Sequence record: PQ898399.1
Length of the DNA: 64,000 bases
Reading direction: 5' to 3' (one strand)
Shown here: piece by piece, positions 244 through 58,678 of the stretch
Position numbering within the stretch: position 1 is the first letter of the stretch
How the letters are laid out: the number at the start of each line of letters is the position of its first letter
Translations under genes and position numbers: made by a program
The notes under the pieces: generated by a model
Database searches by the model: none
What the model saw: only the letters and a program-made list of their open reading frames with translations
Told to the model about the DNA's origin: nothing

Positions 244-331
244 GGGGAGTTAATTCCGTAGAGGTAGCGGTGCAGACTGTAAATCTGTTGTCATTGCGAC
301 TCGGGTGGTTCGACTCCATCACTCCCCACCA
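244..331 (+). tRNA. tRNA-Tyr(GTA)
   Basis: anticodon arm gcaga-CTGTAAA-tctgt, TTCGA loop, long variable arm, CCA end. Confidence 0.9.
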
Positions 332-1793: not shown

Positions 1794-1799
1794 AATTAT

Positions 1800-1939
1800 C
1801 GGTTCGAGGAATTGCCTAAGCCGTAAGCCGAGTAGCGTTTTTGACGGAACGTTCGGATATGGTAGAGGCATGGCCTTCATAAGATAAATTGTGACGTCAA
1901 TCGCAATTTAACCTGGTTCGAATCCAGGCGTTCCGTACA
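1800..1939 (+). ncRNA. rnaC: T4 stable RNA species I homologue
   Basis: GCCGTAAGCCGAGTAGCGTTTTTGACGGAACGTTCGGATATGG and 3' T-arm GGTTCGAATCC-AGGCGTTCCGTACA match the T4 species I sequence as I recall it. Confidence 0.8.
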
Positions 1940-4976: not shown

Positions 4977-5159
4977 ATGATTAATCTGTACCGACATCCT
5001 GATATGAATGTTAGTTATCTCGTTGATACTGAATCAAATCGAGTTCTTACATATTGGCATGATAGCTGCTTAAACACAACTCATCTTGACCCGATTGTAA
5101 GAAAGAATTTAATTCTTCTTGAGGAAGATACTCAAGTTGAACCTGCTCTTCATTTTTGA
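4977..5159 (+). CDS. hypothetical protein
   Basis: ORF track, operon context. Confidence 0.6.
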   Translation: MINLYRHPDMNVSYLVDTESNRVLTYWHDSCLNTTHLDPIVRKNLILLEEDTQVEPALHF

Positions 5160-5212
5160 TGAGTATTTCAAAATCAACTGGTTTACTCAAGTTGATATGT
5201 AATAAATAAAGT

Positions 5213-5340
5213 TGTTCAGTGCTGGAATTGGTAGACAAGGGGTCCAACACCTTTTGAGTTCGCATATTGAATCATATGCTGACGATGGTGGTAAAACGCC
5301 GCAAGAACATGCTTACAGGTTCGAGTCCTGTCTGAACACA
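5213..5340 (+). ncRNA. expanded tRNA-like RNA (~128 nt)
   Basis: acceptor tgttcag/ctgaaca, Leu-type D-arm ctggaattggtagac, T-arm acagg-TTCGAGT-cctgt, but non-canonical anticodon arm and large branched insert. Confidence 0.75.
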
Positions 5341-5342
5341 CT

Positions 5343-5420
5343 CGGGGTATAGCTCAGCTGGATAGAGCAGTGGACTTCTAATCCACAGGTCGACGGGTTC
5401 GAATCCCTCTACCTCGACCA
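5343..5420 (+). tRNA. tRNA-Arg(TCT)
   Basis: gtgga-CTTCTAA-tccac, CCA; one bulged C in T-stem. Confidence 0.9.
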
Positions 5421-5893: not shown

Positions 5894-6127
5894 TACAGAG
5901 AGTTGCAGCTCTCGTATGAAGACGTCGTGTTAGAAGAGAAGGTTAGCCCTTGCCGCTTTGGTTCTGCGGAGCCACCGGTTGTTAATCACCTGCAAAGTGA
6001 CACCTCCACGACGCTATATTCCCAGGGGCGAGACTGATGCCTCCGAGTCGCTGGGAATGAACTTCTGCAGGCCATCTGCCAGTAGGTGGTGCTGTCGATT
6101 CTTACGCCCTGTCTTCGGACGGGGCGT
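5893..6127 (+). ncRNA. candidate GC-rich multi-hairpin ncRNA
   Basis: gagag/ctctc, cgtcgtg/cacgacg, attcccag/ctgggaat, acgccctgtc-TTCG-gacggggcgt helices. Confidence 0.55.
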
Positions 6128-6134
6128 TGTTGCA

Positions 6135-6142
6135 TATAAATA
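6135..6142 (+). promoter_or_regulatory. T4-type late promoter (TATAAATA)
   Basis: exact consensus 29 nt upstream of ATG 6171. Confidence 0.85.
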
Positions 6143-24648: not shown

Positions 24649-25070
24649 TTGAAATAGAAGTTGTAACTACTAAGAAAAAACTTAGTATGTCATTGCTAAA
24701 ACAAATGCCAATGGCTTCTATTTCCGGAATAAAATTTGCTATGATGGACCCTTCTCAAAGGGTCCTTGGATATGTTAATGCTTTTAAGTGGAATAAGATT
24801 AACATTCAAGTGGCAATCATTAATACCGGAAGTGATTGGGCATTAGTTCCACTATATGAAACTGTGTTAAAAGAGCATGTTCAGCGGGAACAACACCCAG
24901 ATGGCCAAGAATATCATACGCATGAAGTGAAATACTATTATTCTTACCAGAAAGTTGGAAATATTAATAGAACTTCAAAGAAAAGCGAAGATAAAGAACA
25001 CGTTGAACAATGTGTTAAAATTACCAATGAGCTAGTAAAATTTGCCAAAGGACAACACATTTATCTATGA
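24645..25070 (+). CDS. hypothetical protein
   Basis: coupled ORF. Confidence 0.75.
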   Translation: MIEIEVVTTKKKLSMSLLKQMPMASISGIKFAMMDPSQRVLGYVNAFKWNKINIQVAIINTGSDWALVPLYETVLKEHVQREQHPDGQEYHTHEVKYYYSYQKVGNINRTSKKSEDKEHVEQCVKITNELVKFAKGQHIYL

Positions 25071-26077
25071 AAACAGTTATGAAAGGCTACTTCGGTAGCC
25101 ATCTTTACGGTACGTCAACACCAGAAAGTGACACGGACTTCAAAGAAATCTTCGTTCCACACCCAAAAGATATTCTTATGGGTCGTGCAATGAACCATAC
25201 TAATATGAATACTAACAACACTTCAACAAAGAATTCTCACGATGACGTTGACCATGAACTCTATTCTCTCAAGTATTGGTTGGAACTCGCTCAGTCAGGA
25301 GAAACTGTTGCTCTTGATATGCTTCATACTCCTGCTAATCTGATTGTTAAATCTGACCTGCCTGATGTCTGGAAATTTATCCAAGATAACCGCTGGCGTT
25401 TCTACACCACTGATATGAAAGCTTATCTTGGTTATGTGCGTAAGCAAGCGGCTAAGTATGGCGTCAAAGGTTCTCGTTTAGCTGAACTTCGTAAAGTGCT
25501 TGAGGTGTTAGAGCCTTATCCAGAATGGAAATATGAAGATCGTCCAAAGGATAAAGCTCACAATGTTCGTTGGAAAGTTGCTGATATTGCTCATCTGCTT
25601 CCGATTTCAGAGTTTCTTGAATGGACTGATTTCGTTGACCACAAATCTGGTGTGCAGAAGTTCTACAACGTGCTTGGCCGTAAGTTCCAGACAACAATCA
25701 CTGTTGCCGAAATGAAATACAGTCTCACTAAACTGTGGAACGAATATGGCGAACGTGCTCGCAAAGCAGAAGCTAATGAAGGCGTAGATTGGAAAGCTCT
25801 GTCTCATGCTCTTCGTGGTGGCCTTCAACTGCAGGAAATCTACACAACTGGTGATTTGGTTTATCCGCTTAAAGATGCTGAGTTCATCAAGAAAGTTAAA
25901 GCCGGTACTATTCCATTCAAAGAAGTTCAAGAATGGTTAGAAAACTGCGTAGATGAAGTTGAACGTCAAAGCATCATCGCTTCTAAAAACGGCATGCCTG
26001 ATAAAGTTGACATGACGTTCTGGGACAAGTTCTTGGAAGAAGTTTATCTGGCTAACCACAACTCTTACTACAGGTGA
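25067..26077 (+). CDS. nrdC.11: NrdC.11 nucleotidyltransferase-like protein
   Basis: MKTVMKGYFGSHLYGTSTPESDTDFKEIFVP; 336 aa. Confidence 0.92.
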   Translation: MKTVMKGYFGSHLYGTSTPESDTDFKEIFVPHPKDILMGRAMNHTNMNTNNTSTKNSHDDVDHELYSLKYWLELAQSGETVALDMLHTPANLIVKSDLPDVWKFIQDNRWRFYTTDMKAYLGYVRKQAAKYGVKGSRLAELRKVLEVLEPYPEWKYEDRPKDKAHNVRWKVADIAHLLPISEFLEWTDFVDHKSGVQKFYNVLGRKFQTTITVAEMKYSLTKLWNEYGERARKAEANEGVDWKALSHALRGGLQLQEIYTTGDLVYPLKDAEFIKKVKAGTIPFKEVQEWLENCVDEVERQSIIASKNGMPDKVDMTFWDKFLEEVYLANHNSYYR

Positions 26078-43922: not shown

Positions 43923-45607
43923 AGATTTTCAAATTGAACCGAGTCAAGTATCAAAATATTATGTCAGTGGGCGGACAGCCCATTGATATTCAACTTGATA
44001 AGGTTCACAAAACATTAATCACTGGTAAGAATGGTGCCGGTAAAAGTACAATGCTTGAAGCGATTACGTTCGCATTGTTTGGTAAGCCATTCCGTGATTT
44101 CAAGAAAGGCCAATTAATTAATTCCACCAATAAGAAAGGATTGCTCTGCGAATTGTGGATGGAATATGACGGTCATTCGTATTACATCAAACGTGGACAG
44201 AAACCAAATGTCTTTGAAATTGAACGCGACGGTGCTAAACTTGATGAAGCAGCTTCAGTTAAAGACTTCCAAAGTTATTTCGAAGAACTCATTGGAATGT
44301 CATACACGAGTTTCAAGCAGGTCGTGGTACTCGGAACAGCAGGCTACACTCCGTTTATGGGTCTTAGTACACCCGCTCGGAGAAAGTTAGTAGAAGACTT
44401 GCTTGAAGTTTCAATCATTGCTGAAATGGATAAACTGAATAAGTCTTTGGTTCGAGAACTGAATTCTCAAGTTCAAGTTCTTGATGCAAAGAAAGACGGA
44501 ATTCAGCAACAAATCAAAATCTATGAAGAAAACATAGAGAAGCAAAAGAAACTTTCTGGTGAAAACGTTGCTCGTTGGCAGAGCATGTACGAAGAGTCTA
44601 TGGCTGATGCTCGTAACATTCGTTCAACTATCGACGAGCTGAACAAGAACTTGGCTAACATCGTAATTGGCGAAGAAGATGATGTGTCTGAAGGAATTCA
44701 GAAAACTCAGATGGCTGGGATGACTATTCTGAACCGCATCGAGTCATACACAAAAGTTCTGTCGTTGTATGATAAAGGCGGTCATTGCCCAACATGTTTG
44801 CAGGATTTGCACTCCAGTGACACTCTAATCGGCCAGATTAACTCGAAAGTTGATGAATGTAATATCAAACATGCTGAGTTAAAAACGCATCTAGAGAATC
44901 TTCAAGCATCCCAGATGGAATACGAAGCGGTCAAACGTCGAGTAAGAGACATCAGAGGCCAGGTAGCAGCCAAAACTGAAGAGTTGAAAGCAGCTGTTGA
45001 GCGTATTCGTAAGATTAAAGCAGCTATTGACAAAGCAGCTGAAGAGTTCATTGATTATTCAGATGAAATCAAAACGCTTAATGAAGAATTGAATAAAATA
45101 GTTGATACCAAATCTAACTCAGTCATGGAAAAATATCTTCGCGGTATTCTTACTGAGATGTTCAAGGATTCTGGTATTAAAGGCTTAATAATTAAGAAGT
45201 ACATTCCGTTGTTCAATAAGCAAATTAATTCTTATTTGAAAGTAATGGATGCTGATTATGTCTTTACTTTGAACGAAGAGTTCAATGAAACTATTAAATC
45301 TCGCGGTCGCGAAGAATTTAGTTACAACTCTTTTAGTCAGGGTGAAAAGGCACGTATTGATATTGCGCTGTTATTCACTTGGCGTGATATAGCTGAATTA
45401 GTATCTGGTGTTAAGATTAACTGTTTGTTCTTAGACGAAGTATTCGATTCTGCTACGGACGTTGACGGTGTAAAATCTATCACACAAATACTCAACAAGA
45501 TGCAAGATTCAAATATCTTCATCATCAGCCATCGTGACCATGACCCTCAAGCATACGGTCAACATCTTCAAATGAAGAAAGTTGGTCGCTTTACGGTACT
45601 GGAATGA
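43919..45607 (+). CDS. 46: recombination ATPase subunit (Rad50-like)
   Basis: GKNGAGKST, CPTC hook, FSQGEKARI, FLDEVFD. Confidence 0.98.
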   Translation: MKIFKLNRVKYQNIMSVGGQPIDIQLDKVHKTLITGKNGAGKSTMLEAITFALFGKPFRDFKKGQLINSTNKKGLLCELWMEYDGHSYYIKRGQKPNVFEIERDGAKLDEAASVKDFQSYFEELIGMSYTSFKQVVVLGTAGYTPFMGLSTPARRKLVEDLLEVSIIAEMDKLNKSLVRELNSQVQVLDAKKDGIQQQIKIYEENIEKQKKLSGENVARWQSMYEESMADARNIRSTIDELNKNLANIVIGEEDDVSEGIQKTQMAGMTILNRIESYTKVLSLYDKGGHCPTCLQDLHSSDTLIGQINSKVDECNIKHAELKTHLENLQASQMEYEAVKRRVRDIRGQVAAKTEELKAAVERIRKIKAAIDKAAEEFIDYSDEIKTLNEELNKIVDTKSNSVMEKYLRGILTEMFKDSGIKGLIIKKYIPLFNKQINSYLKVMDADYVFTLNEEFNETIKSRGREEFSYNSFSQGEKARIDIALLFTWRDIAELVSGVKINCLFLDEVFDSATDVDGVKSITQILNKMQDSNIFIISHRDHDPQAYGQHLQMKKVGRFTVLE

Positions 45608-45795
45608 AACAATACGCAACCGGGAACGAGTTACTAACGTTCCCTGAACTTAAAAGATATGTTCTCACTAATAATTTTTCCGGTGAAGAGCATGTCGTTA
45701 CCGAACAGCATTTAAAAGATGCTTTCGGTAAACAGTATGATAAAATATCTTCCAACAGGCATCCTGCTTGGACAGTTTCTGAATTTTTTGAATGA
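45604..45795 (+). CDS. 45.2: gp45.2
   Basis: synteny; ISSNRHPAW. Confidence 0.8.
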   Translation: MKQYATGNELLTFPELKRYVLTNNFSGEEHVVTEQHLKDAFGKQYDKISSNRHPAWTVSEFFE

Positions 45796-45804
45796 GAAAA
45801 TAAT

Positions 45805-46230
45805 ATGCTGAATATCGTTACTGATGTTAAAGAAATCCAACCTAAAAACGTACGTACTGACTCCAATCCTAACAATCAGAATAAAATCCGTCGAGCATGG
45901 GTTCTGATGCTGCCTGAAGAAATTAAAGAAGCTATTAAACGCAAACTGCCAGATTCTGAAGTTCGTTTCGCTTATTACTCTTCTATTGATAATTCAATCT
46001 CCGAAAAGTGGATTGAATTAATGCGTAAGCATTATGACCGTTCAATTAAAGCTGGCGCTAAAGTTATTCTTGATAACGTCGGTGGTGAACGCCTGGAAGA
46101 CGAATTCTGTACTAACGCTGACGAGCAACTGTTGGTAGCTGCTGAAATCGTTGCTCAAGAAGTTTATGATAGCTTCGCTCCATTTGTTGTAAAATCTGAA
46201 TCATCTGAAACTGAAATTGAATTGAACTAA
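45805..46230 (+). CDS. rpbA: RNA polymerase binding protein
   Basis: EIQPKNVRTDSNPNNQNKIRRAWVL. Confidence 0.92.
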   Translation: MLNIVTDVKEIQPKNVRTDSNPNNQNKIRRAWVLMLPEEIKEAIKRKLPDSEVRFAYYSSIDNSISEKWIELMRKHYDRSIKAGAKVILDNVGGERLEDEFCTNADEQLLVAAEIVAQEVYDSFAPFVVKSESSETEIELN

Positions 46231-46238
46231 GGAAAAAC

Positions 46239-46925
46239 ATGAAACTGTCTAAAGAAACTCTGAATATTCTGAAAAACTTCTCTACCATCAACTCTGGCAT
46301 TATGCTGAAACCTGGTAAGTTCATCATGACTCGTGCAGTTAATGGTACAACTTACGCTGAAGCAACTATCGCTGACGAAATTGATTTTGAAGTTGCGATT
46401 TATGAACTGAACGGCTTCCTTGGTATTCTGTCTCTGGTTAATGAAGATGCAGAAATTTCTCTGGCTGATGATGGCAACATCAAAATTGCTGATGCTCGTT
46501 CAACAATTTTCTGGCCGGCAGCTGACCCAAGCACTATCGTATTCCCAAGCAAACCAATTCCATTCCCGGTTGCTTCTGTTATCGTTGACTTCAAATCTGA
46601 AGACCTGCAGCAACTGATGCGAGTATCTCGCGGCCTTCAGATTGACACAATCACCATCACTAATAAAGACGGTAAGATTGTTCTGAATGGTTTCAATAAG
46701 GTAGAAGATTCTGCACTTGTTCGTACCAAATATTCTCTGACTCTCGGTGATTATGATGGCACGAATAACTTCAACTTCGTTATCAACATGGGTAACATGA
46801 AGATGCAGCCTGCCGATTATAAACTGCTGCTTTGGGCACAGGGTAAGAAAACTGCTGCTAAGTTCGAAGGTGAACATGCAAGTTATGTAGTAGCAATGGA
46901 AGCAGATAGTACTCACGATTTCTAA
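46239..46925 (+). CDS. 45: sliding clamp
   Basis: MKLSK.TLNILKNF.TINSGIML; 228 aa. Confidence 0.98.
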   Translation: MKLSKETLNILKNFSTINSGIMLKPGKFIMTRAVNGTTYAEATIADEIDFEVAIYELNGFLGILSLVNEDAEISLADDGNIKIADARSTIFWPAADPSTIVFPSKPIPFPVASVIVDFKSEDLQQLMRVSRGLQIDTITITNKDGKIVLNGFNKVEDSALVRTKYSLTLGDYDGTNNFNFVINMGNMKMQPADYKLLLWAQGKKTAAKFEGEHASYVVAMEADSTHDF

Positions 46926-46932
46926 TTGTGAT

Positions 46933-46952
46933 AGGATGGTCTTCGGACCATC
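46933..46952 (+). terminator. cUUCGg hairpin between 45 and 44
   Basis: ggatggtc-TTCG-gaccatcc. Confidence 0.7.
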
Positions 46953-46984
46953 CACTGATTTGATTAATTCAATATGAGGAAATT

Positions 46985-47944
46985 ATGTTAAGCATTAACG
47001 AAAAAGAACACATCTTCGAACAGAAATATCGTCCACAATCAATTTCGGAATGTATTCTTCCGGAATTTGACCGCCAAGTATTCGATGCTATCATCAAGAA
47101 AGGCACCATCCCTCATATGATTCTGGTATCTGCGTCTCCAGGTACAGGCAAAACTACTTTAGCAAAAGCACTTTGTAACGACGTCGGTGTTGAAATGATG
47201 TTCGTTAATGGTTCAGATTGTAAGATTGATTTTGTACGTGGACCACTGACAAACTTTGCAACTGCTGCCTCATTATCTGGTAAGCAGAAAGTTATTGTGA
47301 TTGACGAATTTGACCGTTCAGGTCTTGCTGAATCTCAGCGTCACTTACGTTCTTTCATGGAAGCTTACTCAAGCAACTGCACAATCATCATCACTGCTAA
47401 CAACATCGACGGTATCATTGAACCACTTCAATCTCGTTGCCGTGTTATCAAATTCGGTCAAGCGACTGATGATGATAAACGCAACATGATGAAAGAGATG
47501 ATTCGTCGTTGTGTAGAAATCTGCAAAAATGAAAATATCAAGGTTGAAGACCTTAAAGTCATCGCGGCATTGGTTAACAAGAACTTCCCAGATTTTCGTA
47601 AGACGATTGGTGATTTGGACCATTATTCTTCCAAAGGCGTTATTGACTCTGGAATTTTGGATTTAGTGACGAAAACTTCTGGTGATATCAGTGATGTTAT
47701 TGATGCACTGAAATCAAAAGATGTTAAACAACTTCGTGCACTAGCTCCTAAGTACGCGACTAATTATTCTTGGTTTATCGAGAAACTTGCTAACGAGCTT
47801 TACACGAAAGTTGATAAAGCAAGTATCATCAGGATGTATGAGATTGTCGGTGAGAACAATCAATATCATGGTGTAGCAGCTTCGACAGAACTGCACATAA
47901 CTTATATGTTCATGCAACTTGTTGTAGAGATGCAATTCAAATGA
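46985..47944 (+). CDS. 44: clamp loader large subunit
   Basis: [27 protein letters not shown]; 319 aa. Confidence 0.98.
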
Positions 47945-48413
47945 GTTTATTCGAAGATGACGTTCAGCTGAACGAACACCAGATTGCTTGGTATAGTAAA
48001 GATGAGGCAGAGATTAAACGTCTCTCTGATACTTTCAAAGAAACAGCAGAAAATGAATTCTTCGCAATAATCGGTGCAATTAACGAGAAGAAAGATATCT
48101 CAATCGGAACTCGTGATTATTCGAAATTCATGGTAGAAAATGCTCTATCTCAATTTCCAGAATGTATGCCATCAGTTTATGTGATGAACTTAGTTGGTTC
48201 TGGCTTGTCAGATGAAGCTCACTTCAATTATCTGAAAGCGGCTGTTCCTCGTGGACGCCGTTTTGGTAAGTGGGCTAAGTTAAACGAGAGCGCCCAGGAG
48301 ACACTCATTCTGAAAGTATTGATGAATCATTATACAATCAATATCAATGACGCTGAGCGTTATAGAGTGACTCTAGCCAACAAAAATAAACTGTCTGAGA
48401 CATTAAAACGTCT
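47941..48413 (+). CDS. 62: clamp loader small subunit, truncated by assembly gap
   Basis: MSLFEDD..LNEHQ.AW, ENALSQ.PEC, AVPRG.R.GKWAK. Confidence 0.93.
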
Positions 48414-48513
48414 NNNNNNNNNNNNNNNNNNNNNNNNNNNNNNNNNNNNNNNNNNNNNNNNNNNNNNNNNNNNNNNNNNNNNNNNNNNNNNNNNNNNNNN
48501 NNNNNNNNNNNNN
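48414..48513. other. 100-N scaffold gap joining two different phage genomes
   Basis: exactly 100 N; genes on both sides are truncated; strand and gene family change. Confidence 0.97.
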
Positions 48514-50626
48514 GTGATGCACCACCAGTCCACCAGGACAACACCACAGCAATGACCACCACTACAGCTTTAAAAATACCAGTTTGATACCATTTGGTTT
48601 TAACTGTGTACTCAGTACCAATGAGGATGTGGGTAGCCCGCGCAAACAATGTTTCTCGGTCGTGAGCAGAGAACATTTTACGGAAAGCATAATCCAGAGG
48701 AACCATCAGGTTCTCGTTATCGCCACCTTTGCTAATGTTCTTACCACCTACCTTGAAACGTCCATTGAGGTTGTAAGCACGAACTTCCTCATACTGAGTT
48801 GGTGAACTCTGGATACGATAAAAATGGTAGCTAACATCCTGGTTTACATAGGTAGTGCTGGTAGATCCGTCACTATTAGTTACAGTAGTTCCTATCTTCC
48901 GTTGCCCTGTGCCACGACCTGATGCAGTAAAACCGACCGGGCCAATAACACCAGTGATCTTGCGATAACCGATAGCATCCAGTGAGTTACCGATCTCAGT
49001 AGCTACGTCTGTTGTAGTCATCGTACAGCCCTGGTGTGCAGCCCATGTAGTGTACTCATCTGCTGGCTGTGAAGGGGCAAATACAATAGGGTTACGCATA
49101 CCGTAAAGGATGCGGAAATACTGGAAGAGGTATTCCTGTTCCAGGGTATTAGTCGTGTTAGCAGGTACACACTGTACCATCAGTACAGAACGGATCTTGC
49201 TGAGGGAACTCAAGCTGTTGTAGATCTGATCTGTAATTTCAAGCCAGGGTAAATCAAGTTTATTGCCCAGCTTAATGGAATCTTTATAAGGCTTCTTACC
49301 TACAAAGTTACCCTTGTCCAGACGGTCACCATTAAGACGGAAATACATCCGTGGATAACCTTTACCGAAATCAGCTACCGGGGTACTGGTAATCCCATCC
49401 AGTGATGGATAAGAACCGGAGCCATACTGGTAGGTGAAGTAGTTAATAGCTACCCCACCACTGGAAGTAGGGTAAGTAAAGCAGACTTGGAAATAGTCTT
49501 CATCACTACCTACCGATTCACCAGAAGGATCCAATGGTGCGTTAGGGTCAATGTTACCCATGTCGTCATCATCCAGCACAGTCTCAGTATCTACATTCTG
49601 ATCAGGGATAAAGTCATACTGACCAAAGCCCATCTGGATTCTGGCAATAATATCTACGACTACCCGACGTGTAGTAATAACCCGACTGACGGTTGTAGTC
49701 ACTTCAGTAATGACACCAGTAGTGGGATCTGTAGTAGACGTAGTAGTTGGTGGATCGCTTTCGTTAGTCGTACTGCTATCAGTTTGCGTATCTGTCTGGC
49801 TGATGATCCCAGTTGTAGGTGGAGTCTGTCCATTCCAGTCAGTTGTATTACTGGTTTGGTCAGAGGAACTCGTAGTAGTTTCTTCATCATAACCACCAGA
49901 GCCATTAGGCGTCTTAACCGTAGTGTCTACCTTAGTGGTGGTCACTGTGGTAATACGCTTTACACCGAGGAAACGAGTAGCGTACTGAAGATCCACATAG
50001 TTGGAATCAGTAGTGCTTGTGCCATCCAAAGTATCAGCACGGGAATAGTTAGCACTCCGGGTAGGCGTAGCCCCACCTGTAGGTGGATAACCCCAGTGTT
50101 GTAATACATAGGGATCGGCATCAAGCACTGTCTTGGTAGTGAGCATATTCCTGGCATCATGCAGGTAAGCATCTGCACCCAATGAAGCTCTTAAACCAGT
50201 GAGTTTATTGTCAGTGGCTGTATATCCATAATTGGAAATGAGCAGTTGCCACATGGCATGACGCAGGTTGATTGGCCCGAACTTGCTGTATACGTATGAC
50301 AGGTCATTACGCCCGGTAAGCGAAACCAGAACATCATTGAAGGAACCAGAGTCTGTGAAGTCAGTCTGGGCTACCACAGTGGATTTACCCACACCGTAGT
50401 AATACTTATCTGGTTTCGATGCCCAGCGGTAAGCTGCATTCCACTTAACAGCGTTACTCTTCCAGCCATACTGGATCATGAGGTCAGCCAGTGGGGTAGT
50501 GTTCTCTTCGTCAAGGACGTAAGTAGTAATAGCCTGTCCAATTACGTCTGGCAGATATTCATCTTCTATAAGACGTGAATACGAGAAGTCTCGGTACGTC
50601 TTCTTCTTGCTGCCAAATAAACCCAT
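48514..50626 (-). CDS. N4 gp53-like virion structural protein, 3'-truncated
   Basis: MGLFGSKKKTY start; Thr-rich region; N4 synteny. Confidence 0.8.
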
Positions 50627-50640
50627 AGGATTCTCCAAAT

Positions 50641-50663
50641 AAAAAGGGAGCCGAAGCTCCCTT
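50641..50663 (-). terminator. rho-independent terminator
   Basis: aaaagggagc-cgaa-gctcccttt. Confidence 0.75.
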
Positions 50664-50680
50664 TATGATACTCAACTTTC

Positions 50681-51478
50681 TTAGGTCGGGGTAACGTTAA
50701 CGTTAATCCCTGCCAGCAATTTCTGCATGGTCTTACCGAGAGTGGCATCATCCAGCAAGTTAGTGCTGTTGGCCTGAGTATCTTCATCAGTCTGACGACG
50801 AACGTTCCAGGTGTTAGCGATAATCTGAGCCGCCTGCTGTTCAGCATTACGGTCATAACCATCAGCCTGTTTGTTCATCAGTGCAATCTGAGTACCGATA
50901 ACAGAACCAGAAGCAGCAATACCGGCCTGAGTCTGTGCTTTCTCAGTAATAGTACGCTGTTGGTAGTACGCAGTCTGGGCTTCGGCTTGCTTAAGCTGTT
51001 CAGCCATGAGTTCAAGCTGTTTAAGCTGAACCTGGATTTGAGCATCTTTAAGCTCCAGATCCTTCTCTGCCAGTTCAATATTCTTATCGGCAAGCTCAGT
51101 CTGCTTGATGATAAGGTTTGTCTGTGCAGTGATCTGTGCCATCTCCAGAGGGATCTTTTGCATCTCTGCCCGGATCTGTTCTTCCTGAGCCTGAACCAGA
51201 GATGCCTGACCTTCAAGGAGTTTAAGCTCTAAGCCCTGCTTCTGTTTAGCAAGCAGGAACTCAATAGCAGCTTGTAGCGTAGCCTGGAAAGCACCCAGAT
51301 AGACAGTAGCATACTCCGGCCCACGGATACGTTCTTTCTCGAACTGGTCACCCAAATGCACACGCATGGTTTCCAGCATTTTGTCCAGAACGCCCGTACC
51401 TACTAATTTCGTTTCCGTCAGATCAGTAACATCTAACGGAGTAGTTGAAACCATCGGTGGAATAATAATCTCTGCCAT
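50681..51478 (-). CDS. N4 gp54-like structural protein
   Basis: LTE..L.G.GV.D.ML, F...RI.G.EYA.VYL, coiled coil; synteny. Confidence 0.8.
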   Translation of the reverse strand: MAEIIIPPMVSTTPLDVTDLTETKLVGTGVLDKMLETMRVHLGDQFEKERIRGPEYATVYLGAFQATLQAAIEFLLAKQKQGLELKLLEGQASLVQAQEEQIRAEMQKIPLEMAQITAQTNLIIKQTELADKNIELAEKDLELKDAQIQVQLKQLELMAEQLKQAEAQTAYYQQRTITEKAQTQAGIAASGSVIGTQIALMNKQADGYDRNAEQQAAQIIANTWNVRRQTDEDTQANSTNLLDDATLGKTMQKLLAGINVNVTPT

Positions 51479-51489
51479 CTGGGTTTACC

Positions 51490-52050
51490 TTATGCGTTGT
51501 CGTCGGTAGCTCGACGTGCCAACTGCTGTGCTGCCAGCGCCTTCAGTTCTTCTTCAGTCAATGGAGGCAGAACTTCGATGGTATACGCAGCAATTGACTT
51601 GGATTCACGGATTGGAATGCCATGTTTACCTTTCTTGGTGGTGAACACCTGTACGCGTTTTTCACGCAGAGCGTTAACCATAATCTGTGGTAAGTGCCAC
51701 GGTTCATCCAGGTTATACGGGATGTACTTACGGTAAGTACCGACGAAGGAGTTACCTACCGTCATATACTCACCAGGCCATTCTTTCTTAGCCGGGTCGT
51801 TACAGTGGATGCGAACACGCACCAGTTTTGATGCTTCGGCTTTCTTACGACTACGACGAGCAGCTTCGTCTTCATCGGCAGCCGGACGGACTGTGCCTGT
51901 GGACTGGTTTGCCAGCGTATTGTTTACACGCTCACGCAGGGTGTCTACAGAGATAGAAGGGTGGTATTTGATCCCCAGAATATCAGCACGAGCTTTCAGG
52001 GATTCCAGTTCATCTACTTGTGGCAGGTCATCATTATCGACTTGTGACAT
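51490..52050 (-). CDS. N4 gp55-like protein
   Basis: LKARAD.LGI.YHP.I, LVRVRI.C.DP.KKEW.GE. Confidence 0.8.
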   Translation of the reverse strand: MSQVDNDDLPQVDELESLKARADILGIKYHPSISVDTLRERVNNTLANQSTGTVRPAADEDEAARRSRKKAEASKLVRVRIHCNDPAKKEWPGEYMTVGNSFVGTYRKYIPYNLDEPWHLPQIMVNALREKRVQVFTTKKGKHGIPIRESKSIAAYTIEVLPPLTEEELKALAAQQLARRATDDNA

Positions 52051-52077
52051 AAAGAAAAATCCTCATTGGTTTAAATA

Positions 52078-52103
52078 AAAAAGCCGGGGAATTATCCCCG
52101 GCC
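52078..52103 (-). terminator. terminator after major capsid gene
   Basis: aaaaagccgggga-attat-ccccggc. Confidence 0.75.
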
Positions 52104-52137
52104 TTAGCTTAGCTCACTTTAATAACTGAAGCCAGAA

Positions 52138-53310
52138 TTACATCTTAGCCGCAGTCATAACCAGAGCGATACGTTCTGGACGCAGAGCCATGAAGCCGTA
52201 GAACCAGCGAATGGAGATGAAGCCAGTTTCGCCGTATGGATCCAGACGGTCAAGGTTCTCACCAGGACGTTTGTGGTTGATTTCGAACTTAACGGTATTA
52301 CCCGAAGTCTGGAAGGTGATGGTCGCAAAGGACTCGTCACCAACTACCAGCATTGGGAATACGTCGTAGTTCGTACCGTTGTTGTAGTACACGGCATCGT
52401 CGCCAGAAGCCAGCGTAGCACCTGCACCTTCCCACTTGAACATGTTCGGGTTAACGATGATACGGAACTGGTCAATCTGACCGACTTCACCAGCAGCCAG
52501 GGTAGTACCCGCAGCATAGTGCTCAGCAGAGATGAACGCAGCGTTGTCGTGCATATCTTTCATTGCACGCAGCGTAGGGATCAGCTCAGAGCCGATGTAC
52601 ATATAGCGAGCAGCCGGAACAACACGGGTATCGATGTTACGAGTACCGTTCAGGATAGTCGTGTGTTTCGGAGTACGGTTGTTGTCCAGGTCAATGGACA
52701 GGCGCATCAGGTCACCATAGGTAACCACATCGCCCTGGCCGATTTCGCCACGGGAGGTTGCATCGCCAGCGTAACGGATTGTACCTGCGTTGTTAATCAG
52801 GTCGATCTGAAGGGCGTCTTCAGTGATCTGGTTAGCAGCAGTCAGCAGTTCGCGGTTGATGTGTTGCAGCAGATCCGCGTCAGAATCGAAGTTCAGAGAA
52901 TCTTTGGTGTATTCAGTGAAGAAACCAAACTTCTCGAAAGTACCTTCGAGTTCCAGACGAGTAACGCCGACACGGTTAACACGACCGCCGTTCTCACCCA
53001 GTACAGGCAGTTTACCCGGCACAGAGCCGATATCTTTGCTGGAACCATACAGGTTACCATTGGAGATCTTCGCACCAGTTGCGTCGATACCCTGGTCGTT
53101 GACGTTACGGTCATCCAGGATCGGCATGTAGTGGAAGCGTTTAATGGTTTTACCATAGTTCGCTGGGATGGCTGTTGCAGTAGCCAACTGGGTGAAGAAC
53201 TGCTCTTTACGCAGTTCGGTCAGAGCCTGGCGCTGGTAATACGCAGTAACAATCTGCGGGCCAATGCTGGACTCTTTCCCATTAATGGGATCTTTATATT
53301 GCATAACCAT
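52138..53310 (-). CDS. major capsid protein (N4 gp56-like)
   Basis: YGKTIKR.HY.P.LDDRN.NDQGIDA.GA.I.NGNLYGSSKDIG, ENGGRVNRVG, DPYGE.GF.SI. Confidence 0.95.
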   Translation of the reverse strand: MVMQYKDPINGKESSIGPQIVTAYYQRQALTELRKEQFFTQLATATAIPANYGKTIKRFHYMPILDDRNVNDQGIDATGAKISNGNLYGSSKDIGSVPGKLPVLGENGGRVNRVGVTRLELEGTFEKFGFFTEYTKDSLNFDSDADLLQHINRELLTAANQITEDALQIDLINNAGTIRYAGDATSRGEIGQGDVVTYGDLMRLSIDLDNNRTPKHTTILNGTRNIDTRVVPAARYMYIGSELIPTLRAMKDMHDNAAFISAEHYAAGTTLAAGEVGQIDQFRIIVNPNMFKWEGAGATLASGDDAVYYNNGTNYDVFPMLVVGDESFATITFQTSGNTVKFEINHKRPGENLDRLDPYGETGFISIRWFYGFMALRPERIALVMTAAKM

Positions 53311-53324
53311 AAATAGTCAGCCTC

Positions 53325-54503
53325 TTACCGGAATTGAGTTGGGTCAATCTTAGCAAACTCTTCGTCAGAAAGGGAAAATAAGTTTTCACCTTTAATAGCT
53401 GGTTTGCTTTGGACGGTTTGTTTTGGTGCTGCCGCAGCTTTCTTAGCGTTCACCGTTTCTTTCTTCGGTGCAGCTTTAGCTGGTGGCACTACTACATCTT
53501 TGGCAGGGGCTGGTTGTACGCCCGGAACTTTAAGTAAGCCCTGAGCTTGCAACTGCTGTTCTACTGCCGCGTGAGCTTGCAAAGAGTTCATGCCAACCAG
53601 TTGGCCTAATACCTTCTGACGCTGAACTTCATTTGCAATGAGGTCAAAATTGCCCGAAGACTTTTGAGCATCCAGTACACGGAGTAGCCCAGGGTTGTTG
53701 GCAATAAAGTCCTGGCTTGCTGCGTCCCATGCAGAAGTAACATGAGTCAGCACTTCTTTGAAACCAGGGTTGTTCTGTAATTCTTGAACTGTGTCAGCAA
53801 GTTCAATCTGGCTTTCTGGCGGAGCCTGGTGTTGAGACTGGTAGCCTGCACCTTGCTCGACGTCGAAGTCCATAAGGTCGATACCGCTGTCCTGAACCAG
53901 CTTAGCGATAGCCTTCGGATCTTTTTTATGCAGGTCGATTAAGAAACCGAGTTCCTGCTCGTTCAGAAGGTTTTCGTTTTCCAGCATCTTCATAATGCGA
54001 CGGGTGGGCTTCAGAGCAGCCATCTTTTCATGGTAGTTCGCACCCATCTGCATAAGCTTGATCACTTCTTCAGGTGACTGAACAGTGATATCACGCCCAT
54101 TGGCTTTGAAGGGTTTACCAACGATGGACTCATAAAACGCTTTGTGATCCGGTACATTCTGAGATTCAGGATCAGTCTTCGCTTTAGAGGTTTCTTTGGC
54201 AGGGGCTTTATCCTTCGCCTTACCTTCTTCGCTCTGCTGTGCAGGCTCATTGGTAGGCTCAGGGTTCTCAGGATCTACTTCAGGTTCTTCTTCCTGTTCT
54301 GGATCCGTTTCAACTACTTCTTCTTCCGGCTCCACTTCAGTGGTTGGCTGGTTTTCAGTAGTCTGTTCCGGTTGTCCATCTTCAGGGTTTTCTGAACCTT
54401 GATTCAGATACTGAGAGATATCTAACCGGCTTAATTCATCTTCAGACATGTTCAGAACATCTGGAACATTCTGTTGATCTAGTTGCTCGGTATTAGCACT
54501 CAT
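53325..54503 (-). CDS. N4 gp57-like protein (probable scaffold)
   Basis: acidic low-complexity N-terminus, FKANG, LMQMGANY..KM; upstream of capsid. Confidence 0.85.
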   Translation of the reverse strand: MSANTEQLDQQNVPDVLNMSEDELSRLDISQYLNQGSENPEDGQPEQTTENQPTTEVEPEEEVVETDPEQEEEPEVDPENPEPTNEPAQQSEEGKAKDKAPAKETSKAKTDPESQNVPDHKAFYESIVGKPFKANGRDITVQSPEEVIKLMQMGANYHEKMAALKPTRRIMKMLENENLLNEQELGFLIDLHKKDPKAIAKLVQDSGIDLMDFDVEQGAGYQSQHQAPPESQIELADTVQELQNNPGFKEVLTHVTSAWDAASQDFIANNPGLLRVLDAQKSSGNFDLIANEVQRQKVLGQLVGMNSLQAHAAVEQQLQAQGLLKVPGVQPAPAKDVVVPPAKAAPKKETVNAKKAAAAPKQTVQSKPAIKGENLFSLSDEEFAKIDPTQFR

Positions 54504-58189: not shown

Positions 58190-58264
58190 GATGGGATAGC
58201 TAAACGGTGAAGCGGTAGACTGTTAATCTATGATAGCTGGGTTCGAGTCCCAGTCCCATCGCCA
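58190..58264 (+). tRNA. tRNA-Asn(GTT)
   Basis: gtaga-CTGTTAA-tctat, CCA. Confidence 0.93.
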
Positions 58265-58269
58265 AATTT

Positions 58270-58344
58270 GGTACTATAGTTCATCGGTTAGAATACTCCC
58301 CTGTCACGGGAGCGAGCCGGGTTCGATTCCCGGTAGTACCGCCA
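58270..58344 (+). tRNA. tRNA-Asp(GTC)
   Basis: ctccc-CTGTCAC-gggag, CCA. Confidence 0.95.
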
Positions 58345-58349
58345 AATAT

Positions 58350-58431
58350 GTGAGTGTGGCTGAACGGTTGAAAGCGGCAGACTGTAAATCTGTTATCCCA
58401 CATGGTGGTTCGAATCCATCCACTCACACCA
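58350..58431 (+). tRNA. tRNA-Tyr(GTA)
   Basis: gcaga-CTGTAAA-tctgt, CCA; variable region unpaired. Confidence 0.9.
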
Positions 58432-58437
58432 AACATT

Positions 58438-58514
58438 GCCGAGTACCCCGTAAGAAGGGATGTTCTTCCTGAGAAGGATTGCTACATAAGGTTCATAGCC
58501 TTTATTCGGCTCCA
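58438..58514 (+). ncRNA. degenerate tRNA-like RNA (77 nt)
   Basis: 7-bp acceptor gccgagt/attcggc + T + CCA; aagg-TTCATAG-cctt T-arm; weak anticodon stem around CTGAGAA. Confidence 0.6.
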
Positions 58515-58521
58515 ATTTTAT

Positions 58522-58597
58522 TGGGGTATAGCCAAGTGGTTACGGCACCGGTCTTTGATATCGGCATTCTCTGGTTCGAATCCAGATACCCCATCCA
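58522..58597 (+). tRNA. tRNA-Gln(TTG)
   Basis: ccggt-CTTTGAT-atcgg, CCA. Confidence 0.93.
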
Positions 58598-58600
58598 AAT

Positions 58601-58678
58601 TACCCGGTAGGCTTAATGGTTAAGACGCCCCCAGAACTTAAGACTGGGATACAGGTTCGAATCCTGTCCGGGTAACCA
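58601..58678 (+). tRNA. atypical tRNA, 9-nt anticodon loop (TAA or TTA reading)
   Basis: tacccgg/ccgggta acceptor, perfect T-arm, cccag-AACTTAAGA-ctggg, 2-nt variable region. Confidence 0.7.

What the first reader, a model, noticed from the sequence alone, without database searches (positions are those of the whole stretch)
5213..5340. Giant tRNA-like RNA (~128 nt) with a branched insert in place of a normal anticodon/variable region
Seen: intact 7-bp acceptor (tgttcag/ctgaaca), Leu-type D-arm (ctggaattggtagac) and perfect T-arm (acagg-TTCGAGT-cctgt). Between them lie a non-canonical hairpin aagg-GGTCCAACA-cctt and a three-way domain: gttc/gaac enclosing gcatat/atatgc and ggtg/cgcc hairpins. 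There is no encoded CCA and no valid 7-nt anticodon loop. It heads the second tRNA cluster. Inference: a second tRNA-scaffold RNA carrying a cargo domain, conceptually like T4 species I, or an intron-containing or decaying tRNA-Leu.
Basis: partly seen in the sequence, partly recalled or inferred. Interest (0 to 1): 0.7.

Follow-up and report, generated by a model that had tools for sequence, protein, structure and literature searches.

The report
Long-armed tRNA-Leu mimic RNA in phage
This 127-base stretch is a conserved, structured phage RNA with the body of a leucine tRNA, but its anticodon arm is replaced by one long irregular helix, so it almost certainly cannot decode; its job is still unknown.

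Summary
ARAGORN and Rfam both miss it.

It is not decaying and not intron-split. The same ~127-nt RNA sits in the stable-RNA clusters of Karam-, Jiaoda-, Marfa-, Kanagawa- and Winklervirus phages. Conservation starts and stops at the predicted RNA ends. Across 24 sequences, 24 of 31 base pairs show compensatory changes.

The covarying fold is one ~62-nt arm in place of the anticodon arm, with four helical segments and two purine-rich internal loops, followed by a short variable-arm hairpin.

No anticodon loop is conserved, the discriminator base varies (C/A/U), and CCA is not encoded, although all four neighbouring tRNAs encode it.

The arm comes in two allelic forms that have been swapped between near-identical genomes.

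My reading: a non-decoding tRNA mimic, matured like a tRNA, whose arm binds a partner (decoy or tether). The identity is well supported. The function is inferred.

It is unrelated in sequence to T4 species 1, whose orthologue lies at 1799-1937.

A sample of IMG/VR holds over 100 other "giant tRNA-Leu-like" phage RNAs with unrelated inserts.

The parts
5213..5219 (+). Acceptor stem, 5' strand (UGUUCAG)
   Evidence: Pairs 7 of 7 with 5332-5338. In the family, 6 of the 7 acceptor pairs show compensatory changes.
5220..5238 (+). U8-G9 linker and Leu-type D arm. The D stem is reduced to U11-A25 and G12-C24, and the 10-25 pair is a C.A mismatch here. The D loop carries A14, A15 and G18G19.
   Evidence: The D-loop letters are invariant in 19 sequences. 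The 10-25 equivalent pair is G-C or A-U in 15 of 24 sequences and broken in 9, mostly type A.
5239..5243 (+). Pa, 5' strand (GGGGU). This is the base of the long arm, in the position of the anticodon stem.
   Evidence: Pairs with 5296-5300. The U-A pair is A-U in Jiaodavirus. 4 of 5 Pa pairs covary in the family.
5244..5247 (+). Internal loop 1, 5' side (CCAA)
   Evidence: Its last A is invariant across types A and B. It faces GUAAA at 5291-5295.
5248..5251 (+). Pb, 5' strand (CACC)
   Evidence: Pairs with GGUG at 5287-5290. Invariant in type A. All 4 pairs covary between types A and B.
5252..5257 (+). Internal loop 2, 5' side (UUUUGA): a bulge followed by GA. K-turn-like.
   Evidence: UUGA is invariant across types A and B. 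It faces GAU at 5284-5286, and tandem G.A/A.G pairs are possible. The motif assignment is my inference and was not tested.
5258..5267 (+). Pc (GUU), a C/U mismatch and Pd (GCAUAU), 5' strands
   Evidence: Pc U-A is C-G in Jiaodavirus. Pd A-U is G-C in VMC03 and, separately, in EnC07 and L194.
5268..5273 (+). Terminal loop of the long arm (UGAAUC)
   Evidence: The loop reads UGNAUC in type A. It is different in type B (UUGGUAC) and in Winklervirus, so the loop sequence is not what is conserved.
5274..5283 (+). Pd and Pc, 3' strands (AUAUGC U GAC)
   Evidence: Partners of 5258-5267.
5284..5295 (+). Internal loop 2, 3' side (GAU); Pb 3' strand (GGUG); internal loop 1, 3' side (GUAAA)
   Evidence: The A of GAU and the G..AA of GUAAA are invariant across types.
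5296..5300 (+). Pa, 3' strand (ACGCC)
5301..5314 (+). Short variable-arm hairpin (GCA-AGAACA-UGC) followed by UU
   Evidence: GCA/UGC here is GAC/GUC in Jiaodavirus, which I read directly as two compensatory swaps. The two-pair version covaries C-G to A-U in the family. The U before the T stem is invariant and can form a Levitt pair with A15.
5315..5331 (+). T arm (ACAGG UUCGAGU CCUGU)
   Evidence: 3 of the 5 stem pairs covary.
5332..5339 (+). Acceptor stem, 3' strand (CUGAACA), and discriminator C
   Evidence: The discriminator is C here and A or U in relatives. It is followed by ACU and then tRNA-Arg at 5343. No CCA is encoded.
5190..5212 (+). AT-rich leader (GUAAUAAAUAAAGU) directly upstream: the probable promoter region of the cluster
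   Evidence: Relatives have a MotA-box-like TGCTT(t/c)A and a TATAAT/TATAAA -10 element ending 5-6 nt before the RNA's first base (read by eye). The sigma-70 scan found nothing here in the window itself.

Best explanation
The element is a gene for a small stable non-coding RNA of about 127 nt.

It keeps the whole L-shaped core of a type-II (leucine-type) tRNA: the acceptor stem, the D loop with G18G19, the A15-U48 pair, the T arm and a short variable arm. Its anticodon arm has been replaced by a single arm of about 62 nt. That arm has four helical segments and two conserved purine-rich internal loops, one of which looks like a K-turn.

It is transcribed with the neighbouring tRNAs, from a promoter just upstream. 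It is probably cut out by the tRNA-maturation enzymes: RNase P at its own 5' end and at the 5' end of the next tRNA, followed by 3' trimming.

It does not decode. I think the tRNA core supplies processing, stability and tRNA-like recognition, while the long arm is the working part that binds a protein, host or phage. The RNA would then act as a decoy, competitive inhibitor or tether for something that normally handles tRNA.

Shown: the gene is real, conserved and folded as described, and it lacks a conserved anticodon loop.
Inferred: how it is processed, that the arm binds a protein, and the decoy role.

The confidence given is for the whole statement. By part it is about 0.9 for a functional structured RNA, about 0.85 for non-decoding, about 0.7 for maturation by tRNA enzymes, and about 0.3 for the decoy or tether role.
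For: Identity and structure:
- Homologues of the same length occupy the same cluster in five or more Tevenvirinae genera.
- Conservation stops at the RNA ends.
- Type B alone has 18 of 31 pairs with compensatory changes. The 24-sequence family alignment has 96.6% of cells paired, 24 of 31 pairs changed on both sides, and a covariation score of 0.63 against at most 0.17 when partners are slid.
- A model built without type A finds the window copy at 65.7 bits, above real tRNA-Leu genes.
- One-base indels in AS6, VMC03 and L194 rule out a conserved reading frame.

Non-decoding:
- ARAGORN and Rfam find no tRNA.
- The only 7-nt loop is not conserved.
- ARAGORN's forced intron models give arbitrary anticodons.
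- The discriminator varies C/A/U, and CCA is not encoded although all four neighbours encode it.

The arm as the functional module:
- The internal-loop letters UUGA, A, G..AA are invariant across two arm types that are otherwise about 50% identical.
- The arm types are alleles exchanged between genomes. VMC03 and SmallBear have 95% identical flanks but arms only 57% identical. The window and CW742 are 93% identical upstream but 48% in the arm.

Precedent: bacterial YrlA is a tRNA-like core joined to a long protein-binding helix (PMC4201824). Its anticodon-less tRNA-like domain has been proposed as a competitive inhibitor of an anticodon nuclease (PMC7790460).
Against: - There is no direct evidence of the mature RNA. 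The only public RNA-type runs were contig-level and uninformative about ends or abundance.
- No partner was identified. Neighbouring genes are of unknown function (a gp30.3-family protein and others) and do not change with the arm type.
- The K-turn assignment is imperfect. Most type A copies have an extra U or C on the non-bulged strand, and type B has U where G is expected.
- The terminal loop is not conserved, so the binding surface is undefined.
- The window copy has a weak D stem.
- A purely cis role in operon processing is not excluded.
Confidence: 0.45

Rival explanations
1. It is a cis-acting processing or stability module. A tRNA-shaped leader at the head of the tRNA transcript would recruit RNase P, or shield the 5' end, so that the downstream tRNAs mature efficiently. 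The excised RNA itself would have no job.
For: It is the first gene after a promoter-like element in Karam-, Jiaoda-, Marfa- and Winklervirus. It lies only 4 nt from tRNA-Arg.
Against: In Kanagawavirus (ZX14, Kosakonia 305) it follows the rnaC orthologue and is followed by ORFs, not tRNAs. In Citrobacter phage Ursula it follows tRNA-Gln. A leader would not need a 62-nt arm with covarying helices and invariant internal-loop letters.
Confidence: 0.15
2. It is an aminoacylated, non-ribosomal leucine carrier or a sponge. Bacterial LeuRS ignores the anticodon. After CCA addition the RNA would be charged with leucine and would feed or block an aminoacyl-tRNA-using enzyme, or titrate LeuRS or EF-Tu.
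For: The Leu-type core is fully kept: A14, A15-U48, G18G19 and a type-II D loop. Next after family members, the family model hits true tRNA-Leu genes. In the wider IMG/VR class, 62% have A73.
Against: In this family the discriminator is C, A or U, whereas A73 is, from my own knowledge of E. coli LeuRS, the main identity element. CCA is not encoded although every neighbour encodes it. The D stem is weakened in type A.
Confidence: 0.1
3. It is a Y-RNA-like tether: a circularly permuted analogue of YrlA, whose long arm binds a Ro/Rsr-type or other ring protein and whose tRNA-like end recruits a second factor.
For: It has the same parts list as YrlA: a tRNA-like D/T/acceptor core plus a long helix with two internal loops (PMC4201824; Rfam consensus shown). 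The base of the arm reads GGCGAAC in Winklervirus, which fits the first six letters (GNCGAA) of the YrlA Rsr-site motif, and GGUCCAA here, which resembles the metazoan GGUCCGA.
Against: The Rfam YrlA score is 23.5 against a threshold of 69, and that match spans the junction with tRNA-Arg. The topology is permuted. The motif is short, not conserved across the family, and lies on the other strand and at the other end of the arm compared with YrlA. No TROVE-domain gene was seen among the neighbours or the ten of the window's eleven ORFs of 330 aa or more that were scanned. Whether the hosts have Rsr was not tested.
Confidence: 0.08
4. It is an intron-containing tRNA. The long arm would be removed and the halves joined, for example by phage RNA repair enzymes, to give a working tRNA.
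For: The insert sits where the anticodon loop should be. T-even phages carry RNA ligases and a kinase-phosphatase (my own knowledge). Some unrelated IMG/VR members keep CUU...AAAA around the insert, together with A73 and CCA.
Against: In this family no pair of cut sites gives the same 7-nt loop or anticodon in types A and B and in Winklervirus. The insert is too small for a group I core and has no Rfam match. The discriminator varies and CCA is absent.
Confidence: 0.04
5. It is a decaying tRNA-Leu pseudogene that picked up an insertion.
For: Annotation pipelines label relatives 'tRNA-OTHER, pseudogene'. The window copy has a mismatched D-stem pair and lacks CCA.
Against: The helices covary across genera, the invariant loop letters are kept, and the length is conserved at 123-129 nt. 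A drifting pseudogene would lose pairing.
Confidence: 0.03
6. It is a base-pairing antisense regulator presented on a tRNA frame, like the RNase P-processed C4 RNA of phages P1 and P7.
For: There are two arm alleles with differing loops. That is reminiscent of the specificity differences between the P1 and P7 C4 RNAs (my own knowledge).
Against: The conserved letters lie in internal loops, not in the terminal loop. The unpaired stretches are at most 6 nt. No target search was run.
Confidence: 0.06

Closest known systems
T4 species 1 RNA (rnaC) and species 2 RNA (rnaD)
   Same: They are small stable RNAs encoded inside the T-even tRNA cluster. They have a tRNA-like T arm and paired ends, are not tRNAs, and their function is still unknown (T4 record annotation; sequences).
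   Different: There is no sequence homology. The rnaC orthologue of this phage is a separate gene at 1799-1937. The family model hits only tRNAs in the T4 region. rnaC has no Leu-type D arm, and its acceptor-like stem has two U.U mismatches (read).
YrlA bacterial Y RNA (Rfam RF02553)
   Same: It has a tRNA-like core with D and T arms and tertiary pairs, joined to a long irregular helix. It is non-decoding. In one species it is an RNase P and CCA-adding substrate (PMC4201824).
   Different: It is circularly permuted: YrlA's ends lie in the long helix and its acceptor stem is closed by a loop. The Rfam score here is far below threshold. No Ro/TROVE gene lies nearby.
tmRNA
   Same: A tRNA-like acceptor/T module with a large functional insert between the D region and the T arm, using a synthetase that ignores the anticodon.
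   Different: This element has no G3.U70, no tag reading frame and no pseudoknots. ARAGORN's tmRNA search finds nothing. It has a full D arm and is a third of tmRNA's size.
Engineered 'tRNA scaffold' RNAs (recombinant RNA inserted in place of the anticodon arm)
   Same: The design is identical: the cargo replaces the anticodon stem-loop, and the tRNA body gives processing and nuclease resistance (my own knowledge of the method).
   Different: This one is natural, conserved and built on a type-II Leu body.
Intron-containing tRNA-Leu(UAA) (group I)
   Same: An insert in the anticodon loop of a leucine tRNA.
   Different: The insert here is about 60 nt, has no catalytic core, no conserved exon junction and no anticodon.

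Membership tests
Canonical decoding tRNA (Rfam RF00005; tRNA-Leu) | Acceptor stem, D arm and T arm with the conserved tertiary nucleotides | tested here: met
   Acceptor 7 of 7, G18G19, A14, A15 with U48, and a UUCGAGU T loop.
Canonical decoding tRNA (Rfam RF00005; tRNA-Leu) | A 5-bp anticodon stem with a conserved 7-nt loop and anticodon | tested here: not met
   The candidate stem is 74% paired and does not covary. In its place is a 62-nt arm.
Canonical decoding tRNA (Rfam RF00005; tRNA-Leu) | Recognised by tRNA finders at their thresholds | tested here: not met
   ARAGORN gives no call. Rfam gives no hit even at E up to 10.
Canonical decoding tRNA (Rfam RF00005; tRNA-Leu) | A73 discriminator and a 3' CCA end | tested here: not met
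   C73 here, and A or U in relatives. CCA is not encoded, unlike in the four neighbours. Post-transcriptional CCA addition is not testable here.
T4 species 1 RNA (rnaC) | Sequence homology to T4 rnaC | tested here: not met
   T4 rnaC matches window 1799-1937 at 79% over 139 nt and does not match the element.
T4 species 2 RNA (rnaD) | Sequence or structure homology to T4 rnaD | tested here: not met
   No BLAST match of rnaD in the window. Model R1 does not hit rnaD in the T4 locus.
YrlA (RF02553) | Covariance-model score at or above 69 bits | tested here: not met
   23.5 bits, over the element's T arm plus the 5' half of tRNA-Arg.
YrlA (RF02553) | Encoded next to an rsr (TROVE) gene | tested here: not met
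   The neighbours are a gp30.3-family protein and unknowns. None of the ten ORFs of 330 aa or more that were scanned, of eleven in the window, is a TROVE protein.
YrlA (RF02553) | GNCGAAN0-1G Rsr-site motif | tested here: inconclusive
   GGCGAAC in Winklervirus fits only the GNCGAA part; no G follows within one base. The window has GGUCCAAC and Jiaodavirus GACGGAC. The motif lies at the base of the arm on the strand after the D arm (motif from PMC4201824).
Group I intron in tRNA | Catalytic core and a conserved exon junction that restores the anticodon loop | tested here: not met
   No Rfam intron hit. The insert is about 60 nt. No common spliced loop exists.
tmRNA | G3.U70, a tag reading frame and detection by ARAGORN | tested here: not met
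   The 3-70 pair is U-A. ARAGORN reports no tmRNA.
Kink-turn motif | A Watson-Crick stem, a 3-nt bulge, then tandem sheared G.A and A.G pairs | tested here: inconclusive
   CACC/GGUG, then UUUU, then GA facing GA (5248-5257 and 5284-5290). The G, A and A letters are invariant. There is an extra U or C on the non-bulged strand in most type A copies, and a U for the second G in type B.

The most novel reading that the evidence does not exclude
The element is one case of a widespread and, as far as my searches show, undescribed phage practice. The anticodon-independent tRNA-Leu body would be used as a natural 'tRNA scaffold' to express and stabilise diverse structured RNA modules.

Two capped pattern scans of IMG/VR, together with the loci already fetched, gave 109 unique sequences of 96-139 nt. 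Each has a complete Leu-type acceptor/D/T frame. Their inserts fall into 78 unrelated groups, and many stand alone, away from any tRNA gene. In this family the module has two alleles that are exchanged between near-identical genomes, as expected for a part engaged in a host-phage arms race, for example a decoy for a tRNA-targeting defence.
Probability: 0.3. Interest if true: 0.85.

Novelty: new variant of a known kind. Interest (0 to 1): 0.68.

Why it matters
T-even phages have been known for fifty years to make small stable tRNA-like RNAs of unknown purpose. This element adds a third, structurally clearer family. It has a clean tRNA-Leu body, a defined long arm and two natural alleles.

That makes it an experimentally tractable system: arm swaps, pull-downs, and host panels with and without tRNA-targeting defences.

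It also shows that routine annotation hides such genes. In public records relatives are unannotated, called hypothetical proteins, or mislabelled tRNA-Ser, tRNA-Thr or pseudogene.

If the broader class of tRNA-Leu-framed RNAs in metagenomic phages is confirmed, it would point to a general way in which phages package functional RNAs.

Tried and rejected
- **ARAGORN with introns allowed** on 70 candidates gave arbitrary anticodons and intron positions, so it says nothing about splicing.
- **Hammerhead reading of CUGACGA...GAA.** The A6 position is G in Jiaodavirus and there is no GAAA, so I rejected it by eye.
Both are rejected by pair counts.
- **Rfam** on the element and on 15 IMG/VR loci found only the tRNA model, which matched some of the giant RNAs. 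No ribozyme, riboswitch or intron matched.
- **Conserved neighbour protein** across 60+ loci: none beyond lineage-specific genes.
- **Expression from public runs.** Only assembler contigs were available. Depth was about 2-3 fold higher over the RNA end of the locus in two small runs, which is not evidence.
- **Literature.** Six full-text searches and three look-ups by paper found no description of this RNA. The T4 genome review was not held.
- **Anticodon-mimic tip.** UUGGUAC in type B resembles a tRNA-Thr loop, but this is not conserved in type A, Winklervirus or Ursula.
- **Model R1 on IMG/VR giant RNAs.** They score no higher than real tRNA-Leu genes, so they share the frame only.

Not attempted: a whole-genome search for genes whose alleles track the arm type, and a check for Rsr in the hosts.
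Full report
**Where we are.** The first 48.4 kb of the window is a T4-like Enterobacter phage of the genus Karamvirus. It is 100% identical to vB_Ecl_id4496 and to the record SonariX, and 99% identical to PG7. The finding lies between a small ORF ending at 5159 and a run of four tRNA genes: Arg 5343, Cys 5425, Leu(UAA) 5516 and Thr 5602.

**The observation.**
UGUUCAG at 5213-5219 pairs perfectly with CUGAACA at 5332-5338.
- U8 and G9 follow, then a leucine-type D loop (AAUUGGUAGAC), and ACAGG-UUCGAGU-CCUGU forms a textbook T arm at 5315-5331.
- After the acceptor come C, then ACU, then tRNA-Arg. No CCA is encoded, whereas all four neighbouring tRNAs encode CCA.
- ARAGORN does not call the element. 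Rfam gives no tRNA hit even at E up to 10. Its only match there is a sub-threshold YrlA alignment (23.5 against 69 bits) that bridges the element's T arm and the 5' half of tRNA-Arg, so it is an artefact of two adjacent tRNA-like halves.
- On its own, the minimum-energy fold is only modestly better than shuffles (z = -2.1). The case therefore rests on comparison with relatives.

**Relatives.**
- BLAST with the element alone finds 146 phage records. In Klebsiella phages of the genus Jiaodavirus the match is 80-85% identical and covers query positions 8-134, which is window 5212-5338. Conservation starts and stops at the predicted RNA ends, and the upstream ORF does not align. I call this form type A.
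- At the same place, just upstream of tRNA-Arg, phages of Marfavirus and Winklervirus, one Karamvirus (CW742) and some JD18-like phages carry an RNA with the same outer frame and length (123-129 nt) but a different middle. In Kanagawavirus the same form lies instead after the rnaC orthologue and is followed by ORFs. I call this form type B.
- Citrobacter phage Ursula has a third middle.
- MAFFT aligns types A and B collinearly. Invariant letters are scattered through the middle as well as the frame.

**The fold.**
- RNAalifold on 12 type B sequences gives a cloverleaf whose anticodon stem (Pa) encloses a long irregular hairpin: Pb, an internal loop, and a distal helix. A short variable-arm hairpin follows. 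18 of 31 pairs carry compensatory double changes, spread over every helix.
- The same architecture is predicted for 7 type A sequences.
- In window coordinates the arm is:
  - Pa: 5239-5243 with 5296-5300
  - Pb: 5248-5251 with 5287-5290
  - Pc: 5258-5260 with 5281-5283
  - Pd: 5262-5267 with 5274-5279
  - terminal loop: 5268-5273
- On the type A alignment this fold is paired in 100% of cells, with U-A/A-U, U-A/C-G and A-U/G-C exchanges.
The gttc/gaac closing helix of the three-way junction is paired in 75% of cells and the aagg/cctt hairpin in 89%, and both break in Jiaodavirus.
- A third reading, a 5-bp stem with the 7-nt loop UCCAACA (nominal Leu anticodon CAA), holds only in Karamvirus copies. 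It is 74% paired overall and does not covary.
- A covariance model built from type B only finds all type A copies at 64-81 bits, the window copy at 65.7 bits (E 7e-14) and the Ursula form at 68.5 bits. The next hits are the phages' genuine tRNA-Leu genes at 35-48 bits. That ranking confirms both the family and its leucine-type ancestry.
- On the resulting 24-sequence alignment, 96.6% of cells pair and 24 of 31 pairs show changes on both sides. The covariation score is 0.63, against 0.19 for shuffled partners and at most 0.17 for slid partners. This alignment was fitted to the model's structure, which favours it. The two independent RNAalifold runs and the slide controls argue that the signal is real.
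- Further natural variants fit the fold. The A-U to G-C change in Pd occurs in VMC03, a Jiaodavirus, and in EnC07 and L194, which carry the Karamvirus-type arm.
- One-base deletions in AS6, VMC03 and L194 fall in loops or at helix ends. They would wreck any reading frame.

**Conserved unpaired letters.**
- Across two arm types that are otherwise about half identical, the invariant arm positions sit mainly in the two internal loops. These are the last A of CCAA and the G..AA of GUAAA in loop 1, and UUGA facing the A of GAU in loop 2.
- Loop 2 has the layout of a kink-turn: a Watson-Crick stem, a U-rich bulge, then GA opposite GA.
- Two departures from a canonical kink-turn remain. Most type A copies have an extra nucleotide on the non-bulged strand, and type B has U in place of the second G. 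I therefore treat the kink-turn as an inference only.
- The terminal loop differs between the types, so it is not the conserved site.

**What it is not.**
- It is not a homologue of T4 species 1. T4 rnaC matches window 1799-1937 at 79% over its whole 139 nt, which is where ARAGORN miscalls a tRNA-Met at 1844-1938. Neither rnaC nor rnaD is hit by the family model in the T4 tRNA region.
- It is not tmRNA, not YrlA and not a hammerhead, because the required A is G in relatives.
- It is not an intron-bearing tRNA in any consistent sense. ARAGORN with introns allowed proposes different anticodons for different members. The letters flanking Pa differ between the types, so no common 7-nt loop can be rebuilt.
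- It is not a decaying pseudogene, because drift would not preserve pairing by double changes.

**Context and expression signals.**
- In Jiaoda-, Winkler- and Marfavirus the RNA is preceded by a TGCTT(t/c)A box. About a dozen bases further on lies a TATAAT/TATAAA/TATACT element. This -10 element ends 5-6 nt before the RNA's first base in Jiaoda- and Winklervirus, and 16 nt before it in Marfavirus. By my knowledge of T4 this is the shape of a MotA-dependent middle promoter.
- In the window the corresponding stretch is AT-rich with a late-promoter-like AUAAAUA, but the sigma-70 scan finds nothing.
- In Kanagawavirus the RNA instead follows the rnaC orthologue by about 10 nt in ZX14 and about 60 nt in Kosakonia phage 305, and in Ursula it follows tRNA-Gln. 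It always travels with stable RNA genes but is not always first. This argues against a pure leader role.
- Public RNA-type runs that contain the locus are kept only as assembler contigs, and they show neither ends nor reliable depth.

**Two alleles.**
- VMC03 (type A) and SmallBear_ER8 (type B) are 95% identical over 560 nt on each side and 88-96% identical in the frame. The arm plus variable region is only 57% identical.
- The window (type A) and CW742 (type B) are 93% identical upstream and 48% in the arm.
- The arm type therefore does not follow phage phylogeny. It has been exchanged as a cassette, with breakpoints inside the conserved frame.
- The immediate neighbours do not change with it. 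Any partner must be encoded elsewhere or belong to the host.
- The neighbouring proteins are a gp30.3-family protein (PF08010) and PHROG families of unknown function.

**Mechanism.**
- What is shown is a conserved, folded, tRNA-Leu-derived RNA gene without a decoding loop.
[quoted passage not shown] I therefore infer maturation by the tRNA pathway: cleavage at 5212/5213, cleavage at 5342/5343 releasing a 4-nt trailer, then trimming. The varying discriminator and the missing CCA make regular leucylation unlikely here.
- The best-supported functional reading is a tRNA mimic whose long arm, with its invariant purine-rich loops, is a binding platform.
- The nearest natural parallel is YrlA, a tRNA-like core fused to a long protein-binding helix (PMC4201824). 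In architecture it is a circular permutation of this RNA. For YrlA it has been suggested that the anticodon-less tRNA-like domain competitively inhibits an anticodon nuclease (PMC7790460).
- A phage version of that idea is attractive given the allelic arm exchange, but it is untested.
- My probabilities:
  - about 0.9 that this is a functional structured RNA
  - about 0.85 that it does not decode
  - about 0.7 that it is matured by tRNA enzymes
  - about 0.3 that it acts as a protein-binding decoy or tether

**A wider class.**
- I ran two capped IMG/VR scans for a Leu-type D loop followed 60-95 nt later by a Leu-type T loop. I then filtered for a 7-bp acceptor stem in register. Over all loci held, including those fetched earlier, this gave 109 unique sequences of 96-139 nt (median 124) after dropping tRNA-tRNA artefacts. 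I estimate the filter passes about 3% of random hits. About half of the loci passed.
- The inserts fall into 78 BLAST groups. 62% of the sequences have A73 and 13% encode CCA. Many lie in loci with no tRNA gene at all.
- Of the 88 outside this family, 35 have a stem at positions 27-31 closing around the insert plus a short variable region, as the element does.
- They share only the frame with the present family, because model R1 scores them like ordinary tRNA-Leu genes.
- Rfam's tRNA model accepts several of them with a large insertion and names nothing else.
- One subgroup (L146, L157, L177, L180, L185, with L160 a looser variant) keeps A73. All but L160, and L180 which is cut off at the contig end, also encode CCA. 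It has a normal variable arm and a conserved CCAGUG...GGGGCAGCAC insert (GAGAGCAGCAC in L160). The insert is flanked by AUUAAAA in L146, L157, L177 and L180 and by CUU...AAAA in L160 and L185, which is the tRNA-Leu(UAA) anticodon context.
- No protein neighbour is shared across the class.
- I did not find this class described in the searchable literature. The search is limited to open-access text.

**Verdict.** This is a real and well-supported new family of tRNA-derived phage RNA. The function is open.

Noticed in passing
window 1799-1937 (+): Orthologue of T4 species 1 RNA (rnaC): 79% identical over all 139 nt. ARAGORN reports part of it as tRNA-Met(cat) at 1844-1938, which is probably a false call.
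   Followed up: partly
window ~48414-48513: The window is a join of two phage genomes. Window 44000-48413 is identical to the Karamvirus vB_Ecl_id4496. Window 48514-54000 is identical to the 76-kb phage vB_Ecl_SABI, which has an SU10-type portal and capsid. The 248.7-kb record SonariX looks like a concatenation of the two. The tRNA cluster at 58190-58675 therefore belongs to the second phage.
   Followed up: partly
L003:702-828 vs L136:600-727; window 5213-5339 vs L006:613-741: The long arm exists as two alleles (types A and B) that were swapped between otherwise 93-95% identical genomes, with breakpoints inside the conserved tRNA frame.
   Followed up: partly
IMG/VR loci L008-L222 (e.g. L112:3326-3449, L015:4432-4537, L109:1727-1857): More than 100 other phage 'giant tRNA-Leu-like' sequences of 96-139 nt. 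Each has a complete Leu-type frame. Their inserts fall into 78 unrelated groups, and many lie far from any tRNA gene. Rfam names nothing in them beyond tRNA.
   Followed up: partly
L146:1328-1459(-), L157:1815-1946, L160:14130-14259, L177:5936-6067(-), L180:3-134(-), L185:7383-7515: A subgroup of tRNA-Leu(UAA)-like genes with A73 and a normal variable arm; four of the six visibly encode CCA. They carry a ~46-50-nt insert at the anticodon loop with a conserved CCAGUG...GGGGCAGCAC motif (looser in L160). Two matches to the search pattern lie on some contigs (L146, L186); the second ones were not examined.
   Followed up: partly
window 244-328 and 58601-58675 (+): Rfam's tRNA model passes threshold here (39 and 33 bits), but ARAGORN calls nothing.
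   Followed up: no
window 5894-6140 (+): A GC-rich ~250-nt intergenic stretch after the small ORF that follows the tRNA cluster. It ends in a strong GC hairpin (about 6103-6128) that looks like a terminator. Its fold z-score is -2.4 and it has no Rfam family. The listed TTG ORF from 5958 probably starts near 6172.
   Followed up: partly
window 25067-26077 (+): This ORF matches the RlaP family (PF10127), a Pol-beta-type nucleotidyltransferase associated with RNA repair systems. It may be relevant to tRNA-end metabolism in this phage.
   Followed up: no
L136:600-727, L137:602-733; Roth-series Klebsiella phage records: Public records annotate members of this RNA family inconsistently: as 'tRNA-OTHER pseudogene', tRNA-Ser, tRNA-Thr or a hypothetical protein, or not at all.
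   Followed up: yes
L135:~440-585 and 595-723: In Kanagawavirus ZX14 the element follows the rnaC orthologue after a 10-nt spacer and is not followed by tRNAs. Its 3' end there cannot be made by RNase P cutting a downstream tRNA.
   Followed up: no
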